Shown piece by piece: positions 24,723-33,899 of a DNA stretch of 64,000 nucleotides (positions are counted from its first letter, which is position 1; every line of letters begins with the position of its first letter). A program made the position numbers and the translations under genes. Under the pieces are notes generated by a model, which did not search any database, was not told the origin of the DNA, and was given only the letters and a program-made list of their open reading frames with translations. Source of the stretch: Corallochytrium limacisporum Hawaii (taxonomy: Eukaryota; Protista; Pluriformea); NCBI GenBank assembly GCA_002811645.1, contig PDIP01000047.1, positions 5,861 to 69,860 of the forward strand, in the 5' to 3' direction.

Positions 24723-27494
24723 ATGAGCGCGAGTCAACTCATCTTACCGGTAGAAACCCGGGCGAACACAGGACACATTTGTGGATTTTGCCGAGACGTT
24801 GTGGCTGAGCTACAAGGTATGGGTACCAGCCCCGTGGAGCACCCTCCTCCGCCGAATCCGGCTGCGTCAGATCACATGCCGGTGTCTGCACACGGCCTTA
24901 GCGATAGTGTCAGTCAGTCGACCCGCAGCAGAGAATCCAGCATGTCCTCTGCACGGAAACGCACTCTGAGTATGAATAGTGAAGCGTCTACTGTAGAGGA
25001 GCAGGGCCCTGCGAAATTACAGGAAGCTTGCCTATATCACCTGGCACGGATCGTTGGCGAATCGGCGATGCCTATGGAGGCTATGGACTACATGGAAACA
25101 GAAGACCGCGAAGAGATGGACTCTCTGGTGCAAAGGAGCTTGGGTGGAAAGCTTCGGGAGATTTTCGTCAACGCGGAAATTGCGCAGGCCATCTTTGATC
25201 ATTTGAGTGAGTCGGGTATGCTTAATGCATCAATTATTACGCACGCATTTATTCCAGAGAACTGCTCACTGCATCGTGTGCAGATGATGGCCACGGGACT
25301 GAATCATGCAGCTCTGCGCACCATCTGTTCCCATCCACTGACGACTCTCTGTTTGCCATTGCCGTCTCCTGGTTTCCCCAAGTTCGATGGTGCGTTCGCT
25401 TTGCAGGCCATGGTCGAGACGCGCGTGACTCTCCGCCACTTGTGCCTTGCCGGCTGCAGGCATATTCCTACCGACGCATTCGAATCCATTCAAGGGTTGA
25501 GCAATTTAGTTTACCTAGACCTCAGTGGAACTCAGGTGGATGTTCGACAAATCCACAATCTGCCACATTTGCAGCACCTAAATCTGAATGCTGTTACAAT
25601 TAATGAGAGCAGCCACCTCTTTGGCCTTGCACATAGGTGGACCAGACCACAGCTGAAAACCCTCAGTCTGGCAAATACCTGGATCCACACCCAGATGTGG
25701 AAGTCTATTGAAGAATTCACCGGTTTAGAAATGCTCGATGTGACGGGGTCCGATGTGACCGTCTCCTTGATGTCCACCGTGATTTCTCGCGCGTTGCCAA
25801 ACCTCAGATGGCTGGCCCTCAATGGCATCGGCATCGAAGATGAGCATTTCCAGGCCATTGCCAACGGATGCCCCAAACTGCAGTTCGCGGGCTTGTGTCT
25901 AACGAGCATGAAGAGACCTTTTGTACGTGATGGTCTTGTTGTTGCTGGCCACAATTCCCTGCAGGAAATAAGAGCGGCCTTGGAAGTCTATCCCGCCGCT
26001 GCAGATTTCTGCTTTAATGCTCTGCGGCATCTGTTCTTCATGTACCGGAGCCAGCCTCCAGAGACGGATCAAGGTGATGCGATGCGTGTTCTTCAGGCCA
26101 TGCGCATTCACTTCCACAACACCACAGTAATGGTGGCTGCTAGTGCAAGCATGTTCCACTTGACGCGTCAAGGTATGGATGGCCAGGATCCGGAGGTTCG
26201 GAGGGCTGTGCTGGAGCTGCTCGTGGAAGGAATGCAGTATCATGCAGGAAACCTGCAGTTCCAGAAGAATGCATGCCTCACATTGTACAACTTTATGATT
26301 TCTGGAGAGCTTGAATACTGCTACGAGCAACTTGCAAAGTTACTTATGGTAGCGGCTTTCAAGTTTAGTGATGTGGCAATCATTCGCATCAGCTTGAACT
26401 TGGTAAACTCTCTGGTGTGTCTCGGAGGACATCACAAACTAGTCATTGGACGAAGTGGCGTGATAGTTGATGTTCTGTGGTTGATCAATGACCGTATGCG
26501 CACGCCTGGTCTAGCTAGCGTCCTGGAGACCGCATGGAGTATGTTGTGGAACATCACCGATGAAACACCAGAGAATTGTCATCTCTTCTTCAATGCCAAT
26601 GGTATGGATAGCTTAATGGCTTGTATCCAGTCCTATCCCAGCGCAGAAACCATGATCCGCAATATGCTTGGCCTCTTAGGAAACATTGCCGAGGTCCCTG
26701 AACTGCGCCTGCGCCTCCTCACGAGTCCAGTCATGCCCAATCTTCGTGAGTATCTGGAATCTGCATTCGATGGAATCGAAGTGTCCTACAATGCGTGCGG
26801 CATTCTGGCCAATCTCATGATGTTAAGTGATGATGAATGGCGCGACAATGGCTACTCCAAATCCGATGTGGCTGTTGATATGTACAAAGCCATTCGCCGC
26901 TGGCCCATTCTGCAGCACCGCAGTATCAACTACCGCTCCCTACTACCCATTCTGACCTTATGCCGCAGCGAGCAGCTGGCGGTGGCAACTTGGGCGCACT
27001 GGGCCATTGCCAACCTGTGCAGTGTGTACCCTTTCAAGTATTGTGAGATCTTTTTGCGTGAGGCTGGGCGCGGTGATGGCACCATTGAGGGTGCATTTGC
27101 AGAATGGGTTGACCCATCTAGTCCTGGCAATCACGCCATGAACATGGCTGCAATGTCAGTGTCAGATACATTGGCTGCTGTGCAGAACGCGCGGGAGATA
27201 GAGAGTAGTACAACCTCGTCGAACGGATCAGGCTCGAATCGCCGGTCTTCGCAGCGGAGTACCTATCCGTTCGCAGGGCCTGAACAACTTGAAGGCAACG
27301 AGCAGTCGAATAACATGGCCAAGAAGATCCTCGAGGAGGACATGGGCAGCAGTATGCCGGACGAGACACAGCAAGATCGGATGAAGCATATGGCGAGACT
27401 GTGCTTAGCGCTGCGCAAGATTGTGGCTCATATGTGTTCATCTTATTTAAATGGAGAGCTTCAATGGCAAGAGGATCCCATGCCTTTGCTTTAA
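24723..27494 (+). CDS. ZER1: ZER1/ZYG11-family CRL2 substrate receptor (BC/VHL box, LRR, ARM repeats)
   Basis: BC-box-like PAKLQEACLYHL, LRRs, then WSMLWNITDETPENC, RNMLGLLGNIAEV, DGIEVSYNACGIL, INYRS and YPFKYC motifs characteristic of ZER1. Confidence 0.9.
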   Translation: MSASQLILPVETRANTGHICGFCRDVVAELQGMGTSPVEHPPPPNPAASDHMPVSAHGLSDSVSQSTRSRESSMSSARKRTLSMNSEASTVEEQGPAKLQEACLYHLARIVGESAMPMEAMDYMETEDREEMDSLVQRSLGGKLREIFVNAEIAQAIFDHLSESGMLNASIITHAFIPENCSLHRVQMMATGLNHAALRTICSHPLTTLCLPLPSPGFPKFDGAFALQAMVETRVTLRHLCLAGCRHIPTDAFESIQGLSNLVYLDLSGTQVDVRQIHNLPHLQHLNLNAVTINESSHLFGLAHRWTRPQLKTLSLANTWIHTQMWKSIEEFTGLEMLDVTGSDVTVSLMSTVISRALPNLRWLALNGIGIEDEHFQAIANGCPKLQFAGLCLTSMKRPFVRDGLVVAGHNSLQEIRAALEVYPAAADFCFNALRHLFFMYRSQPPETDQGDAMRVLQAMRIHFHNTTVMVAASASMFHLTRQGMDGQDPEVRRAVLELLVEGMQYHAGNLQFQKNACLTLYNFMISGELEYCYEQLAKLLMVAAFKFSDVAIIRISLNLVNSLVCLGGHHKLVIGRSGVIVDVLWLINDRMRTPGLASVLETAWSMLWNITDETPENCHLFFNANGMDSLMACIQSYPSAETMIRNMLGLLGNIAEVPELRLRLLTSPVMPNLREYLESAFDGIEVSYNACGILANLMMLSDDEWRDNGYSKSDVAVDMYKAIRRWPILQHRSINYRSLLPILTLCRSEQLAVATWAHWAIANLCSVYPFKYCEIFLREAGRGDGTIEGAFAEWVDPSSPGNHAMNMAAMSVSDTLAAVQNAREIESSTTSSNGSGSNRRSSQRSTYPFAGPEQLEGNEQSNNMAKKILEEDMGSSMPDETQQDRMKHMARLCLALRKIVAHMCSSYLNGELQWQEDPMPLL

Positions 27495-27546
27495 ATGTTT
27501 TAGATATTGAACAAATCCTCTCTATTGTGCCTTGTTTCGGGCGGCT

Positions 27547-30100
27547 TTACTCGTTGTCGTTGGATTTCAGGATTGAGCTGCGGAAGATTTCGGACATAAT
27601 CTTGGGTAGGTCTTGAGTGTTCATGCACACAAAGGCGCGGCCAGTGGGCAACGAACGGCGCAGTTTCTCAGCCTGGTCACCAATAGTACCAATGAAGATG
27701 ACTACAGCGTTCACCTTAGATTCCGAGTCCATGATTTTGGTAAGCTGTTGAGGGTGGATGCCGTAGCGGTCTAGGTTGGCATCTGAGATAAGGCACACAA
27801 AGGATTCATCTGCCTCTTTCTGTGCCATCTCGTTGATGGATTGTTTTAGAGCCTCAACTGTATGATCACCGCTCATGCAGAACTGGGAATGTGCCTGCAT
27901 CTCTAAGAGGACGTCCATCCTATCTTTCTTGTTCTTGGGCTCCTTTCCTTCAGGCACGAGGGGGATACTCGGGCTGTCGCCGCTGTGCCCAACAATCTCG
28001 TATTTGAATCGGTCACCAGTATCTTGTAGAGACTCCATGACCATCAAAGCCGTTTCCATTGCACGGGACAATCGGTTATCCATACCGTTGAAGCGGTACA
28101 TGGAGCCAGAGCAGTCCATGACCAGGCGCATACGCTTCGGATGTTTCATGGTTACGCCGAACTCGGGCTGCTCATACCCACGCCGCTTGTAGATGCTGGA
28201 CTCTCCGGTCAGACCTTCGATCAAGCGGTTATCATCAAGGTCACCATCACTCTGGTTCTTGAGCCACACGCGATCCTGACCCTTGGCTTGCAGGGCCTGT
28301 ACGATGGCACGCAGCTCCTTAGTTTGCTTCTTGATGCCTTCAGCAAATTGTTCGTACTGGCGATTGTCAAAATCGCTCATCTTGATCTCCTTAAGCCGAT
28401 CGGCCAAGGCCTTTTCGCCCATGGCGCGGGCTGCGCGGGCCACCTCTTCAGGCACCTGCGCCTTCTCTTCATCAGAGAGCTGGTATACATCGTGACCAAG
28501 ATCCAGACGATAAGGACCACCCTTGCCACCGAGACCGGCAGTGTCACGACCTCCCGTGCCACCCGCCCATTGGTTGCCCCCAACGTGCGGCTTATTCTCC
28601 TTATCGACCTTGCCGTGTTTCGGGTCTTTCACATCCAGGCCAGAGTTACGATCGTGCTCTATGCGCAGCTTGCCATTCTCCTGCATCATCTTTTCCGGGT
28701 TGCCCATCATTTGCTGCCACTGCTCCAGGCTTAGCTGGAGGTTGGGCACGTAAGTTTGCCAGCAGCGGATATGACCATCGATATCAACAGTGGCAAGGTT
28801 GCCGCTGGCTAATCCAAGCATGTGGATCACAGGCACCTCACGGGCGAGTGCACGGGCGTAATAAGGCCGGTCTACAGGGGGACCACGCGGGACGGCAATG
28901 GTCTTGGTAGTAATGCGCACTAGATCGTTGACTTCCATGGCGCAGACATACGCATGTTTCTGGGACACCACATCTTCGACTTCAGCGCTGACGCGATGGA
29001 CAACCTGGTTCGTCTTGGACATGAACAGGGAGGAGTGCGGGTCCATCTCGATGCGGCCTGAACGGGGAATGGAGTGCAGTTCCACTTTCTCATTACTGAA
29101 GAGACGCTGCGGCATGCCCTGTGCAATGTAGGCGTAGGAATCCGCAGTGGCAAAGGTTTGCACATCAGGGACATTGACTGTGGCTTGCATATCGATCTCA
29201 CCATTCGGAAGACGGGAAAGTTGCAGAGCCGTGGTGCTCATCTGTCCAGAGCTCAGGGCGGAGTACATCTCCTCGTTGGGGAAACCTTCCAAGAGCTGCA
29301 AAACCTCAGGAACACTTGTCAGGCTTTCGTCATCACGGCGGCGATGGAACAACCAGTGTTGATTCTCAGTGTCCCGAATCACCATGTGACCCTGATCAAG
29401 GCAGTCAATGCGTTCAGCAGCAAACGGGAGGGTCATGGAGTATGTGGCACCCTCGGTGAGGTCGACTACTGCCAATTCCTTACTGAACTGGCTATAGATC
29501 ATGAGGGATCCAGATCCGGGGACAGGTTTGGCTGTGAACACCGGTTCGTCCGAATTGTGGCGACCAAAGGCAGCGTTAAAGTGGGAAGCAGCCTCATTGA
29601 AGACCCCCTGGCTCACCGAACAACGGCGCATTGTGCCGGCACTGGTGTCCAGGAGAAGAAGGGAGTTTTCTTCCGCGTCGTGGATGCAAATGTGGTTGCT
29701 CATAATCCCGTCCGGGGCCACCAACCTGAGTGACGGAATGAAGAACGGCGAAGAATGAGGGAAGAAGTCTTGTAGAGAGTAGGTGGTGAGTTCGCGATGC
29801 TTGTCATTTATCTGCCACAAGGTGACAGGCTGGCCGCCGAGCACATAGAAGGCATCTGTAGCCGACGATGACGCCGCGCTGAGTGGCAGATTGGTGTTGT
29901 CGAAGGGTAGGGACCAGCGGTACATTTCTTCAGCAAAACCGACACCACGGCAGTCTTGGCGGTCAATCTCAGAGGAGGTTTGGCTGACCAAGACCGGCTG
30001 GCTCATCTCCAAAGGCTTCTTGATGGCCGGTACCTTAAAGCTACGGGCCATGGGGCTCAGAGAGACAGTGCCCACTCGAATAGTTGCGGGAAGGTTACGC
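27547..30100 (-). CDS. VWA8: VWA8 exon 2: middle region and C-terminal vWA domain
   Basis: PKHGKVD..PHVGGNQWAGGTGGRDTAGLGGKGGPYRLD, MIDAS motif DCSGSMYRFN, VGHSGD, SGDHT, SDANLDRYGI. Confidence 0.95.
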
Positions 30101-30636
30101 CTGTGATGAGGAAAAACAATCGGCACAAAGCGAGCAGAGTCGAGTTAGTAAAATCTACCGCGAAAGACCAGAGTGGCTTGATCGCCAATTACATCGACTA
30201 CACTTAAACTTGACTATATCACAGAGGTGAACAATCATGTACACAACTGGAAGACAATACCATGACAAAGATGACAGTGATGGAGGTCTCGAGAGAACTG
30301 ATGCCATAAGTGATCGGGAATGCTTGCTTTGCGTCAATGAGGGATTGTCAGTCTGCGGATGTGCTCGATGATAAGTGAACATGTCCCTGTTCCCGATAAC
30401 TGTGGCAACCCCGTTCTCATCTTTACACCCACCTGTCAATGAATCCTTGTCATCGGCTGTCCTCCTGCTGCAGTCCTTACGACGTTCACATCCTGTGACC
30501 TTCGCTCTATTCATGAAATTCATATGATAAGCAGCACCGCAAACTTTTTCCGTCCCGTGCATCCCCGAAGGCATCAGAGGTCTCCGTCCAGTTGAATGCT
30601 GTGTAGCGATTTTGCAAAGGAACAATAAATACTTAC
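30101..30636 (-). other. 536-nt spliceosomal (U2-type) intron, phase 2, in VWA8
   Basis: 5'SS GTAAGT (30636-30631), branch point TACTAAC (30150-30144), pyrimidine-rich tract, CAG acceptor ending at 30101. Splicing joins ...LAPE-RNLPAT... in frame (3263+2554 = 5817 nt, 1938 aa). Confidence 0.93.
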
Positions 30637-33600
30637 TCAGGTGCCAGACTAATGTCGTTGGCAGTGGCAACCAAAGGAATGCCATGTTTTACCAGTGTCG
30701 AAATGAATACTTCACGGACGTCCTTGTCGTATGCATCAAAGTCAAATACATTGCGCATGACGACGCCGACGTTCTCGTCGGGAAACTCTTGCAAATGCCG
30801 GACGACATTCACCAGCTCACGAGTACTGTAAGGATACTGTAGGCTTCCCTCGTCCACCATCTTGCGAAGGTCGTCGAATGCCAGGCTGAGTTTCTCTAGG
30901 ATGTGAGTAGGCACGTTGGGACCATACTTCTTCAGCATGCTTATCTCAGACGCCAGATCTGGGTTGTCAACAGCGTGGCAACTAAAGATGTCACCCATGG
31001 CCGCAAAGAAATCGTTACCCAGGAAGGGGAAACCAGGGCGGTTTGCCAAAATGAACATGCGGAACTCAGGATGAATGCGAATAACGCCGTGCTCTGGCTC
31101 GGTTTGATCTGTGTTGTGGAATGCATGACTTGCATAGATCTTGCGACCATCACTCAGCAGCATTTCTCCAGACTCGACCAGAGTCTTCAAAATGCAGGTC
31201 ACGTTCGTGGGGGCTTTATCAGCTTCGTCCACGACCAGAATGTGTCCATACGTCACAGCGCGGACCAGTGCACTGTCCTCATATGTCAGAACACCATCCT
31301 TGACGCTGGGTTGAAGAGTCAGAGTTTGCACTGTGGTGTCACGATGAAGCTGAAGGTACTCACGGGGCTGGTTGAGAACCTGAAGGAAACGATCAACCAG
31401 CTTGTTCTTACCGACTCCCTGGTTTCCAATCAGCAGCAGGTGATCGCCAAGGTTGAAGTCCTGAAGCATTTCCTCGAGGACACGCATATGCTGGTCATTT
31501 TCGTAAAACAGGATATCTGGGACAAGGGCAGGGGCAGTATTCTGCCGGATCTCCCCAACAGTGCGACCAATCTTAGCATACTTCTTGCCATCCCGGTCCA
31601 CGTATTCAATGCTTGAAGAATGTCCTGCGTTGCCGCCCACAAATGCAGCTGCTTTCTCAGATCCTTTCTTAGTCGGAGCTGGAGTGATGTGCTGTTCCTC
31701 CAGAAGCTTCTCCAAAGACTCGCGGGCCATAGAGGGTAGGAAACGGCTCAAGCAAGCACGATGAATCGACGTGTACAACAGGCCCGCACCCTGGTCCTGG
31801 TATGACGCCAGGGCCTTGGATATGCGGATCAGCTGGCGAGTGGACAGAGACTGGCTGATGGAAGACAATGAAGGGTCCTGTGTCTGACGGATTTCCTGGA
31901 CAAAGTTCAAAAGCTTGTCGAGTTGCTTTTGAGGCACGTTCGGCACAGCTCCTTGTAGCACGACCTGTTCCTCAGAGATACTCAATGTGCGCATCTGGTG
32001 GTACATGAACATACTTAGAATCTCGCTACTCAACCAGCTTGTGCCACTACTCGATGGCGGCTCACTCAAAGCGACAATGCGGAACGACGGGTGAATCCTC
32101 ATAATTCCACGCTCGTTCATTCCCATATCATTCAGACCATATCGGTCTTTGATAGCTTCGTAGCGGTCCGGTCCCATCAGACGCTTACCCTCGAACAGAA
32201 CAAGTTCCCGATCTTGTACCAGTCGCTGCAAAACGGTGAAGGTACCGTGGTTGATACGGTGAATCCCGTCTAGAACACACAGAGAACCTTCCAGTGCAGA
32301 CATGACCAAGGGACTGTATCGCCAATAGGTGTCTCCATTGGGCTTTGTCGCACGCTGTTGTAGCAAATCACGAGCAGTCATGTCATTGTAGAGCATGACT
32401 GGTTCCACATTGTATCCCAAAGTTCCGGCGAAATGGTTGACCATTGCACTCTTACCACAACCGCGAGGCCCGATCACAGCAAAGTCGCCAACGGCATGGG
32501 TCATGATCATGTCTGCCATCATGCGCTGGTGGAAAGCGGTCTCAATGAATGGTTCTGCTGCAGGAGGGAAAGTAGAGTTAGGTCCACCTGGAACAGTGAT
32601 CCCAATGTCTTCGCCGCCCTTTTTGTTCTTGAAGACAACCTTAGCAGCGCGTTCCTCATTGCCAAGGCGCTGTACATCACCAATAAGATAAGATCCTTCG
32701 TTACGAGTGCTCAGACCCAGGGACTGGGCTGCACCCTCTACAATATCCCGGTCCTGCTGTCCAACAGTAGATTCAATGGGATACGAGAACCGTGCCAGTT
32801 GCAACGGGTCAACGGCCGGGAACTTCTTGGCAACTGTCGCCAGCAGGTCCATATTGTCCATCGGGAATTCGCTCATGCGTACCATTTGGCTCGTATCAGC
32901 AGCCTGGATGGCGCTGGCGAACTTCAGAGCACTCTCAACTGCCTCTGCACTCTTTGTACCCTGACCTCCAGCGACATTGTGGCACATCTCCAAAAGTTCA
33001 CCATAAGGTGGGGTCGTAATGTCGCGTGCCTGGAAGCGTGAGCGAAGTGGAGGATCAAGGGGGTTGCCACGGAAGCGGGGTACGGGCAGGCCCAAAGCAA
33101 TGACACGGAAACGCTCACTCACACGAACCAGCTTCATGGCTTCGAGTTCCTTGGGATCGTGATCTTCCAAAAGTTTGTCGAAACGTTCTGGAGCCACTAG
33201 GAAGCGACCGTCTTCGAGTCGCATCTCGCGGTTCTCCAGCAGGTTGTTGAGAATGGGCAGCACATTGCGCTCAGCCTTTTCAATGCCTTCAAGGATGAGT
33301 ACACGACCTTCCAGAGCAGCCTTCACTGCTGCCTGGTCCATATAGTAGGCAGTTGAGGAAATAATCTCACGGCGCTGCTTAATATCAGCCTCTGTGGTAT
33401 CTCTGCATAAGCTGATATACTCGACTTCACGTTGCGTCAGCTCACAGAATTTCAGAGCCAAACGTCGTCGGCGAGGGCCCGGAGGACCCACAAGGAAAAT
33501 ATCCTGGCCCAGTAGATCTTTCTGCATCATCCATCGGAGGTGCATCAAATCGGTCTGCTTTTCAGAGCCGCTGGCAGCCTCATTTTCAAGGTAACTAATA

Positions 33601-33899
33601 GGCGCCAGTTCAGGGTATTTTGGTTCACGAATCTCCAGGGTTACATCACCAATGGACACAGTGCGGGGTGGCTGTCCGTTGCCACCTGAACCACCGTTGG
33701 AACCACCGTTGGAACCACCGCCAGCTGCGGACATGCCGCCTGATGACGATGACAGCATTGCTGATCCCCCAATGACTCCACTACCTGCACCGACACCCGA
33801 AGACACATAGGCACGAGTAAGGTTCCCAGTGCTCATCAGCGGTCGCACCATTGCATTTTGGAGGCGTCGAACCACCCCAGCTGATGCTTGAGCTAGCAT
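30637..33899 (-). CDS. VWA8: VWA8 exon 1: mitochondrial presequence and MoxR/dynein-like AAA modules
   Basis: WMMQKDLLGQD, EGIEKAERNVLP, GPRGCGKS, GNQGVGKN, DEADKAP, YPYSTRE. Ends at CCT GA|GTAAGT. Confidence 0.95.
33688..33720 (-). repeat. 12-nt coding tandem repeat (GGSN, about 3 copies) in the VWA8 N-terminal linker
   Basis: gaaccaccgttg repeated on the + strand. Confidence 0.8.

What the first reader, a model, noticed from the sequence alone, without database searches (positions are those of the whole stretch)
30101..30636. Sole visible coding intron sits at the AAA/vWA boundary of VWA8 and opens with an in-frame stop: candidate isoform switch
Seen: the other genes, including 2.3-3.8 kb ORFs (PEX6, ZER1, STAT, CUL1), are uninterrupted, but VWA8 keeps one 536-nt intron. 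The 5'SS itself supplies the stop (CCT GA|G TAA), so retention gives a clean 1088-aa protein ending just after the last AAA module, and splicing gives the 1938-aa AAA+vWA protein. Known: mammals express a short VWA8b isoform lacking the vWA domain, and bacterial MoxR ATPases work with separately encoded vWA partners. Inference: the intron survived genome-wide loss because it sets the ratio of AAA-only to full-length subunits.
Basis: partly seen in the sequence, partly recalled or inferred. Interest (0 to 1): 0.8.

Follow-up and report, generated by a model that had tools for sequence, protein, structure and literature searches.

The report
VWA8 keeps its ancestral isoform-switch intron
In a nearly intron-free single-celled relative of animals, the mitochondrial ATPase gene VWA8 keeps one intron at the exact codon where animal transcripts run into an intron to make the short VWA8b protein, so the long/short design probably predates animals; whether the short form is made here is untested.

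Summary
A minus-strand VWA8 orthologue is split by one canonical 536-nt phase-2 intron (30101-30636; GTAAGT...TACTAAC...CAG). Exon 1 (1088 aa, three AAA_5 modules) and exon 2 (850 aa, vWA with a DxSxS MIDAS motif) are colinear with animal VWA8.

The in-frame TAA is trivial: any phase-2 GTRAGT donor gives one. The position is not trivial. It is the same codon and phase at which animal short VWA8 isoforms end.
- Eleven database proteins besides the window's own (mammal, bird, reptile, fish, mollusc-like) stop at that glutamate.
- Four transcript contigs read GA|GTAAG or GA|GTAGG on into intron sequence.
- The annelid Dimorphilus has its longest intron there (290 nt against about 63).
- Two fungi and Thecamonas lack it.
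- All other tested intron positions are empty here, and a 2288-aa paralogue has no intron.

The 24.1-Mb genome (probably Corallochytrium) is nearly intron-free. The intron is therefore most likely the orthologue of the animal VWA8a/b switch.

The public proteome splits the gene into 1072-aa and 834-aa proteins at the intron. First-stage readers had already noted this same stretch in an overlapping window.

The parts
30637..33899 (-). VWA8 exon 1. It encodes a disordered, arginine-rich N-terminus (possible mitochondrial presequence plus a Gly/Ser-rich stretch) and three AAA_5 modules. Read without splicing it gives 1088 aa ending ...LAPE.
   Evidence: ORF and translation. Pfam AAA_5 x3, E 4.5e-92. 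53-55% identical to animal VWA8. AF2 model has pLDDT 83 and pTM 0.83, with residues 1-74 and 1082-1088 disordered.
32448..32471 (-). Walker A of AAA module 2 (GPRGCGKS)
   Evidence: Translation; invariant columns G477, G480, G482 and K483.
31404..31427 (-). Walker A of AAA module 3 (GNQGVGKN)
   Evidence: Translation; invariant columns G825-N832.
30633..30638 (-). Split codon 1088 and the donor-borne stop. GA|G TAA is read in unspliced RNA; GA+G (Glu) is read after splicing.
   Evidence: Sequence. The same arrangement (GA|GTAAG, GA|GTAGG or AC|GTAAG) occurs in four animal transcript contigs and in the Dimorphilus genome.
30101..30636 (-). Spliceosomal intron, 536 nt, phase 2, GT-AG
   Evidence: Sequence. 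It restores the frame and colinearity with orthologues. No Rfam family near threshold. Fold z-score -1.28, not significant.
30144..30150 (-). Branch site TACTAAC, 43 nt upstream of the acceptor
   Evidence: Sequence. There are only 10 TACTAAC in 264 kb counted on both strands.
30101..30119 (-). Pyrimidine-rich tract and CAG acceptor
   Evidence: Sequence.
27547..30100 (-). VWA8 exon 2: middle region and C-terminal vWA domain, 850 codons plus stop
   Evidence: Translation. Aligns end to end with sea-urchin VWA8 residues 1058-1894, E 2e-173.
27778..28125 (-). vWA domain core (Pfam VWA_2 stretch, exon 2 residues 659-774), with MIDAS DxSxS at 28102-28116
   Evidence: Pfam E 1.5e-3, below the gathering score. 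DCSGS translated. The block is conserved with animal VWA8 and with the paralogue.

Best explanation
The window carries the orthologue of animal VWA8. Its single intron is the orthologue of the intron that animals use to make two proteins from this gene.

- Spliced (GTAAGT / TACTAAC / CAG), the mRNA encodes a 1938-aa protein with three AAA+ modules, a middle region and a C-terminal vWA/MIDAS domain (VWA8a-like).
- Unspliced, or with the transcript ending inside the intron, the ribosome reads GAG TAA. It releases a 1088-aa protein that stops in the flexible tail just after the lid of the third AAA+ module (VWA8b-like).

Shown here: the anatomy, the exact positional and phase identity with the animal breakpoint, the loss of all other tested intron positions in this gene, and the rarity of coding introns in this genome.

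Inferred: that the short form was already made in the common ancestor (I rate the orthology of the intron at about 0.9). Also inferred: that the short form is still made in this organism and is the reason the intron survived (about 0.55).

A non-adaptive version gives the same picture. Intron loss by recombination with cDNA would spare an intron in which many transcripts end.
For: 1. In alignment A1, vertebrate short isoforms (Lemmus 1039 aa, Paramormyrops X2 1030, Pleuronectes X2 1033, Sphenodon 1027, Melanerpes 1031) and four contig-derived proteins all end at ...LAKE or ...LAQE, in the column where exon 1 ends ...LAPE. Of 259 family proteins with a hit to the exon 1 tail, 12 end within 3 residues of that glutamate, and all 12 end exactly on it.
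2. At the DNA level, contigs L001, L002, L003 (83% identical to Aplysia) and L014 (99.6% identical to a loach) have uninterrupted 976-1029-aa ORFs, so their upstream introns are spliced out. They then read GA|GTAAG or GA|GTAGG and continue 254-1969 nt without any C-terminal coding.
3. The Dimorphilus genomic locus has 36 introns. The one after aa 1009, phase 2, maps to window codon 1088, phase 2, and is the longest (290 nt; the others are 52-149 nt).
4. Literature: mouse VWA8a/VWA8b, and C. elegans 974-aa and 1804-aa forms with identical sequence (PMC7297598). The human long form has 45 exons, and zebrafish also has long and short forms (PMC8517341).
5. Mortierella (9 introns), Obelidium (17) and Thecamonas (1) have no intron at this site. 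The intron at GNDFFxxx|GD, phase 1, is shared by Dimorphilus and Obelidium and is absent here, which shows intron loss in this gene.
6. The genome is 24,109,830 bp, matching the 24.1 Mb of Corallochytrium. That organism fell from 5.5 to 0.0 introns per kb of CDS at conserved sites (PMC5560861). At about 32 expected ancestral introns, the chance that a single random survivor is this one is about 3%.
7. The intron lies at 56% of the CDS, not at the 5' end where random survivors of cDNA-mediated loss tend to sit.
8. The 2288-aa paralogue on contig C176 has no intron.
9. The AF2 model places the break after the last helix, in a disordered tail.
Against:
- The splice signals are perfect consensus, which favours efficient splicing.
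- The sense strand of the intron has no AATAAA or ATTAAA, although AATAAA is about 5-fold enriched downstream of stop codons in this genome.
- The immediate stop is generic for phase-2 GTRAGT donors.
- The annotated C. angaria model has no intron exactly at this codon (nearest: after aa 940, phase 1, and after aa 988, phase 0). The nematode short form may therefore arise differently, or that model may be wrong.
- No other unicellular holozoan gene structure could be examined. 'Ancestral to Holozoa' rests on one protist plus bilaterian animals.
Confidence: 0.6

Rival explanations
1. Ordinary constitutive intron and chance survivor. It is spliced efficiently, the short protein is not made in meaningful amounts, and the match with the animal breakpoint reflects only shared ancestry of an old intron.
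For: Fully consensus GTAAGT, TACTAAC, pyrimidine tract and CAG. No canonical poly(A) signal on the sense strand of the intron. The stop at the donor is generic (5 of 9 phase-2 introns in Dimorphilus VWA8). Other coding introns also survive in this genome (notes seen).
Against: Only about 1 in 32 (21 positions in exon 1 and 15 in exon 2 in Dimorphilus) would coincide by chance with the one intron that animals use for the short form. The mid-gene position is atypical for random survivors. The paralogue lost it.
Confidence: 0.3
2. The intron is kept for another function carried in its sequence, such as a non-coding RNA, a structured regulatory element, or intron-mediated enhancement of expression. 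Isoform production is not the reason.
For: First-stage notes on this stretch proposed a rod-like RNA of about 280-350 nt. In intron-poor genomes some surviving introns host snoRNAs (notes).
Against: No Rfam family near threshold: best E 9.2-9.5, at 11-14 bits against gathering scores of 36-44. The whole-intron fold is not unusual: z = -1.28, and 11 of 100 shuffles fold as well. This reading does not explain the positional identity with the animal breakpoint.
Confidence: 0.07
3. There is no intron. Two adjacent genes, an AAA-only ATPase and a separate vWA protein, sit here like a bacterial MoxR/vWA pair. The public proteome models them this way.
For: EukProt holds exactly a 1072-aa protein (M17 to E1088) and an 834-aa protein (exon 2 from its first Met). 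No full-length form was found.
Against: Perfect GT/branch/AG signals with exact frame restoration. The two halves are colinear with single-chain VWA8 of animals, fungi and protists, with only about 3 residues of slack. The 834-aa model would lack a targeting sequence. Gene predictors trained on an almost intron-free genome are likely to miss a rare intron.
Confidence: 0.03

Closest known systems
Animal VWA8a / VWA8b (KIAA0564) long and short isoforms
   Same: Same protein family: 53-55% identity in the AAA half and 36% in the C-terminal half. The break lies in the same codon and phase. The short product ends at the same glutamate with no intron-encoded tail. Both forms share the N-terminus.
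   Different: Animals have about 36-44 introns in the gene, and their short transcripts are documented. Here this is the only intron and no transcript evidence was obtainable. In the animal contigs the mRNA runs on for hundreds of nt into the intron, which suggests intronic 3' ends. This intron shows no canonical poly(A) hexamer.
Bacterial MoxR-class AAA+ ATPases with separately encoded vWA partners (CbbQ-CbbO, NorQ-NorD)
   Same: The AAA modules of exon 1 match NorQ/CbbQ chains in the PDB by sequence (E about 1e-10). A MIDAS-bearing vWA domain is the functional partner. An AAA-only form would recreate an excess of AAA over vWA.
   Different: There the parts are separate genes and the ring is six identical chains. 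Here three AAA modules are fused in one chain, and the vWA domain is attached or omitted by RNA processing. The partner stoichiometry is recalled from the literature and was not tested here.
Midasin and dynein concatenated AAA+ rings
   Same: By sequence, midasin is the best PDB match (E 4e-13). By fold, the exon 1 model superposes on three consecutive dynein AAA modules (7z8h AAA1-3, TM 0.48/0.48; 7mi3 AAA2-4, TM 0.54/0.50).
   Different: Those proteins carry six modules in one chain. VWA8 carries three, so a closed ring would need two chains. That is an inference and was not tested.
Two-in-one genes whose single intron yields two proteins, such as HBS1/SKI7 in this same genome
   Same: A surviving coding intron in an almost intron-free genome whose unspliced form encodes a shorter, differently functioning protein.
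   Different: A different gene. That case reportedly had RNA support; this one has none yet. I did not re-test that note.

Membership tests
VWA8 (AAA+ / vWA mitochondrial ATPase) orthologue | Three tandem dynein-related AAA (AAA_5) modules in the N-terminal half | tested here: met
   Pfam AAA_5, 3 stretches, E 4.5e-92. The AF2 model shows three AAA modules.
VWA8 (AAA+ / vWA mitochondrial ATPase) orthologue | C-terminal vWA domain with a MIDAS motif, colinear with animal VWA8 | tested here: met
   VWA_2 is only E 1.5e-3, below the gathering score. However, exon 2 aligns end to end with sea-urchin VWA8 residues 1058-1894 (E 2e-173), and DCSGS is present.
VWA8 (AAA+ / vWA mitochondrial ATPase) orthologue | Closest relatives are VWA8 proteins, not the in-genome paralogue | tested here: met
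   Best hits are animal VWA8 at 53-55% and Chromosphaera at 51%. The paralogue on C176 is only 37-52% identical.
VWA8 (AAA+ / vWA mitochondrial ATPase) orthologue | N-terminal mitochondrial targeting sequence and matrix location | not testable with these tools
   The N-terminus is Arg-rich, lacks acidic residues and is disordered in the model. No targeting predictor or localisation data were available.
Spliceosomal (U2-type) intron | GT donor, branch site, pyrimidine tract and AG acceptor; removal restores the frame | tested here: met
   GTAAGT, TACTAAC at -43, CAG; phase 2; GA+G rebuilds Glu1088.
Spliceosomal (U2-type) intron | Spliced junction observed in RNA | not testable with these tools
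VWA8a/VWA8b-type isoform switch | Intron in the codon after ...LAK/LAP, phase 2, with an immediate in-frame stop | tested here: met
VWA8a/VWA8b-type isoform switch | Transcripts that stay unspliced at, or end within, this intron while being otherwise mature | not tested
   Met for animal contigs L001-L003 and L014.
VWA8a/VWA8b-type isoform switch | Short protein present in cells | not testable with these tools
   No proteomics access. The split public models (1072 + 834 aa) are gene predictions, not protein evidence.

The most novel reading that the evidence does not exclude
The three-module AAA chain is half of a ring. Two chains close a six-module ring, and the intron-controlled mix of long and short chains decides whether a ring carries two, one or no vWA/MIDAS arms. 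A long+short pair would give 6 AAA modules to 1 vWA, the same ratio as in midasin and in the CbbQ6-CbbO1 type complexes. On this reading the switch is an ancient stoichiometry control, older than animals. It was strong enough to protect one intron through an almost complete purge of introns.
Probability: 0.15. Interest if true: 0.75.

Novelty: new member of a known kind. Interest (0 to 1): 0.55.

Why it matters
- **VWA8 biology.** VWA8 is a poorly understood mitochondrial AAA+ protein linked to human disease, and the role of its short isoform is unknown. If the only intron left in the gene of a nearly intron-free protist is the one that generates that isoform, the long/short pair is probably older than animals and under selection. 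That makes the short form worth studying in its own right.
- **Intron evolution.** This would be a clean, testable case of why particular introns survive genome-wide intron loss. The reason could be function, or the fact that transcripts ending in an intron shield it from cDNA-mediated removal.
- **Annotation.** The finding corrects the public gene model, which splits one gene into two proteins.
- **Literature.** Full-text searches of the held library found no paper linking VWA8b to read-through of this intron or tracing it beyond animals. The library is incomplete, so this is not proof of novelty.

Tried and rejected
- **Blank look-ups.** Exact-protein contig look-ups found nothing for the Pleuronectes short isoform, the window's own 1072-aa protein and Acropora VWA8. 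No vertebrate or cnidarian genomic locus was examined.
- **Unicellular holozoans.** A search with Chromosphaera VWA8, intended to reach other unicellular holozoans and a possible full-length protein of this genome, returned only animals in its best 120.
- **Intronic non-coding RNA.** Rfam gave nothing near threshold.
- **Rod-like intron RNA.** The whole-intron fold energy is not unusual (z = -1.28).
- **Intronic poly(A) site.** The sense strand has no AATAAA or ATTAAA, so this cannot be decided either way.
- **Nematodes.** The C. angaria model has no intron in the exact codon. I do not count nematodes as DNA-level support.
- **ORF inside the intron.** The 176-aa ORF has no family match and is in a third frame, so I rejected it as coding.
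- **Complex prediction.** Not attempted: two AAA halves exceed the 1000-residue limit.
- **Human-length Logan proteins.** Proteins of 1905 aa listed were not fetched or used.

Full report
**What is in the sequence**

The gene lies on the minus strand.
- An ATG-started ORF runs from 33899 to 30637.
- It ends ...CCT GA and is followed by GTAAGT. Unspliced RNA therefore reads GAG TAA and yields 1088 aa ending ...NDISLAPE.
- 536 nt further on there is TACTAAC (30150-30144), then a pyrimidine-rich stretch, then CAG|G at 30101/30100.
- Splicing joins GA to G, rebuilds Glu1088 and continues for 850 codons to the stop at 27547.

Pfam finds three AAA_5 modules in exon 1 (E 4.5e-92). Exon 2 gives only a weak VWA_2 hit (E 1.5e-3, below the gathering score). 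Even so, exon 2 aligns from residue 19 to its end with residues 1058-1894 of sea-urchin VWA8 (E 2e-173). Exon 1 aligns with residues 49-1036 of the same protein. The MIDAS DxSxS motif is intact (DCSGS). The two ORFs are therefore one colinear VWA8 gene with nothing missing between them. The 176-aa ORF inside the intron is in a third frame and has no family match.

I never built or submitted the joined protein.

**Is it more than chance?**

Two things must be kept apart.

The stop codon at the donor is not remarkable. Any phase-2 intron beginning GTAA or GTGA gives xxG TAA/TGA. In the Dimorphilus VWA8 gene, 5 of 9 phase-2 introns do so.

The rarity of the intron is real.
- Neighbouring same-strand ORFs in the window carry unrelated domains and are separate genes.
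- RPS25 is an intact ORF.
- A strict donor/branch/acceptor scan of the window plus 200 kb of another contig found only this case with long open frames on both sides. There were only 10 TACTAAC in 264 kb on both strands.
- The assembly is 24,109,830 bp in 286 contigs. This equals the 24.1 Mb reported for Corallochytrium limacisporum.
- For that organism, intron density at conserved sites fell from 5.5 to 0.0 per kb of CDS, and three of four EJC components were lost (PMC5560861).
- Other follow-up notes of this scan name the same organism. I did not verify the name beyond these concordances.

**The decisive comparison**

The two coincide exactly.
- In alignment A1, annotated short isoforms of a rodent, a bird, the tuatara and two fishes all end ...LAKE or ...LAQE, as do four proteins from metatranscriptome or RNA-assembly contigs. 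This is the column where exon 1 ends ...LAPE. Long isoforms continue ...LAKE-LPLP.
- Of 259 family proteins with a hit to the exon 1 tail, 12 (including the window's own) end within 3 residues of that glutamate. All 12 end exactly on it.
- The contigs behind four of them have uninterrupted ORFs of 976-1029 aa, so roughly twenty upstream introns have been removed. They then read GA|GTAAGG, GA|GTAAGG, GA|GTAGGT and GA|GTAAGA and run on for 359, 880, 1969 and 254 nt. None of this downstream sequence encodes the C-terminal half.
- By similarity, one of these contigs is a gastropod (83% to Aplysia), two are other lophotrochozoan-like invertebrates, and one is a loach (99.6%).
- In the genome of the annelid Dimorphilus I mapped all 36 introns of VWA8. 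The one after residue 1009, phase 2 (AC|GTAAGT), maps to window codon 1088, phase 2. At 290 nt it is the longest in a gene whose other introns are 52-149 nt.
- The literature reports long and short forms in mouse and zebrafish. It also reports a 974-aa C. elegans form identical in sequence to the start of the 1804-aa form (PMC7297598, PMC8517341).

**Phylogenetic spread and loss**

VWA8 is widespread. It occurs in Chromosphaera, fungi, choanoflagellates, Thecamonas, a cercozoan, Rhodelphis, Vitrella and euglenozoan-like taxa.
- Mortierella (9 introns), the chytrid Obelidium (17) and Thecamonas (1) have no intron at this site.
- An intron at GNDFFxxx|GD, phase 1, is shared by Dimorphilus and Obelidium. 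It is therefore old, and it is absent from the window gene. This shows directly that the lineage lost introns from this gene.
- None of the other 20 Dimorphilus positions in exon 1, or the 15 in exon 2, is occupied here.
- With about 32 introns expected from 5.5 per kb over 5.8 kb, a single random survivor would be this particular one about 3% of the time.
- The intron lies at 56% of the CDS. That is not where cDNA-mediated loss usually leaves survivors.
- A paralogue on contig C176 (2288 aa, three AAA_5 modules, a vWA-like C-terminus 40% identical) is one uninterrupted ORF.

**The intron itself**

- It has no Rfam match near threshold.
- Its predicted fold is not more stable than shuffles (z = -1.28). 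The rod-like RNA proposed in earlier notes is therefore not supported as more than chance at whole-intron level.
- AATAAA is enriched about 5-fold downstream of stop codons in this genome (11 of 75 against 2.2 expected), but the sense strand of the intron has neither AATAAA nor ATTAAA.
- If a short form is made here, plain retention is as likely as intronic termination. Partial loss of the NMD/EJC machinery (PMC5560861) would make a retained-intron mRNA easier to translate. That last point is inference.

**Structure**

An AF2 model of the exon 1 protein (32-sequence alignment) is confident, with pLDDT 83 and pTM 0.83. Only residues 1-74, a few loops and the last seven residues are disordered. 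The break therefore falls in a flexible tail right after the last helix of the third module.

Foldseek superposes the model on three consecutive modules of the dynein ring (7z8h AAA1-3, TM 0.48/0.48; 7mi3 AAA2-4, TM 0.54/0.50). By sequence, the nearest solved proteins are midasin and the MoxR ATPases NorQ and CbbQ. No VWA8 structure was found. This suggests, but does not show, that the chain is half of a ring.

**Public annotation**

The protein collection holds exactly a 1072-aa protein (Met17 to Glu1088) and an 834-aa protein (exon 2 from its first Met). Both come from EukProt. A full-length form did not appear in a search that could have found it. The published models thus split the gene at the intron. 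This may mean only that the predictor missed a rare intron. It is at best a faint hint that the transcript evidence was unspliced.

**What could not be done**

The central functional claim is therefore untested in this organism. No gene structure of another unicellular holozoan or of a non-bilaterian animal could be fetched. The annotated C. angaria model lacks an intron in the exact codon.

**Verdict**

- The intron is very probably (about 0.9) the orthologue of the animal VWA8a/b switch intron.
- That it still yields an AAA-only protein here, and survived for that reason, is the best explanation (about 0.55-0.6).
- The main rival is a constitutively spliced chance survivor (about 0.3).
- This is a new, non-animal member of a known kind of isoform switch. 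It is of moderate to good interest because existing RNA data could settle it quickly.

Noticed in passing
G000:C176:295665-302531 (L010:866-7732, + strand): A second VWA8-like gene: one uninterrupted 2288-aa ORF with three AAA_5 modules and a vWA-like C-terminus. It is 37-52% identical to the window gene in the AAA part and 40% in the C-terminal part. It has no intron at the homologous site.
   Followed up: partly
window 27550-30051 (-) and 30636-33851 (-): The public proteome (EukProt) represents this one gene as two proteins, 834 aa and 1072 aa, split at the intron. The upstream model starts at Met17 rather than at the first ATG (33899).
   Followed up: partly
L013:5453-5742 (Dimorphilus gyrociliatus VWA8): The homologous intron is the longest of 36 in this miniaturised genome (290 nt; the others are 52-149 nt). 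It is very AT-rich and contains AATAAA. This fits a 3' end for a short isoform, but AT-richness makes the hexamer weak evidence.
   Followed up: partly
window 27494-27547: The stop codons of the convergent ZER1-like gene (+ strand, ends 27494) and VWA8 (- strand, ends 27547) are only 52 nt apart. Their 3' UTRs must be very short or must overlap.
   Followed up: no
window 33465-33488 (-), protein residues 138-145: The first AAA module has GPPGPRRR where a Walker A GxxxxGK[ST] would be. The lysine is missing, as in animal VWA8 (GPPGPLRR), so module 1 is probably not a conventional ATP-binding site.
   Followed up: no
L025:1882-1998 (G000:C176:91882-91998, + strand): A 117-nt candidate intron with GTAAGT and TACTAAC, and open frames of 66 and 159 codons on either side. 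It was the only other plausible consensus intron in 264 kb scanned.
   Followed up: no
window and G000:C176:10001-210000: Within 150 nt downstream of the stop codons of 75 long ORFs, several hexamers are enriched: AATAAA (11 against 2.2 expected), CTTTAT (12 against 1.6), ACAATA and AAAATA. They are candidate 3'-end signals for this genome.
   Followed up: partly
L016 (Caenorhabditis angaria VWA8 model): The annotated protein reads oddly around NVFDFDSF|RVHKSERH, where orthologues are well conserved, and lacks the intron at the conserved codon. The model may be mis-spliced there.
   Followed up: no
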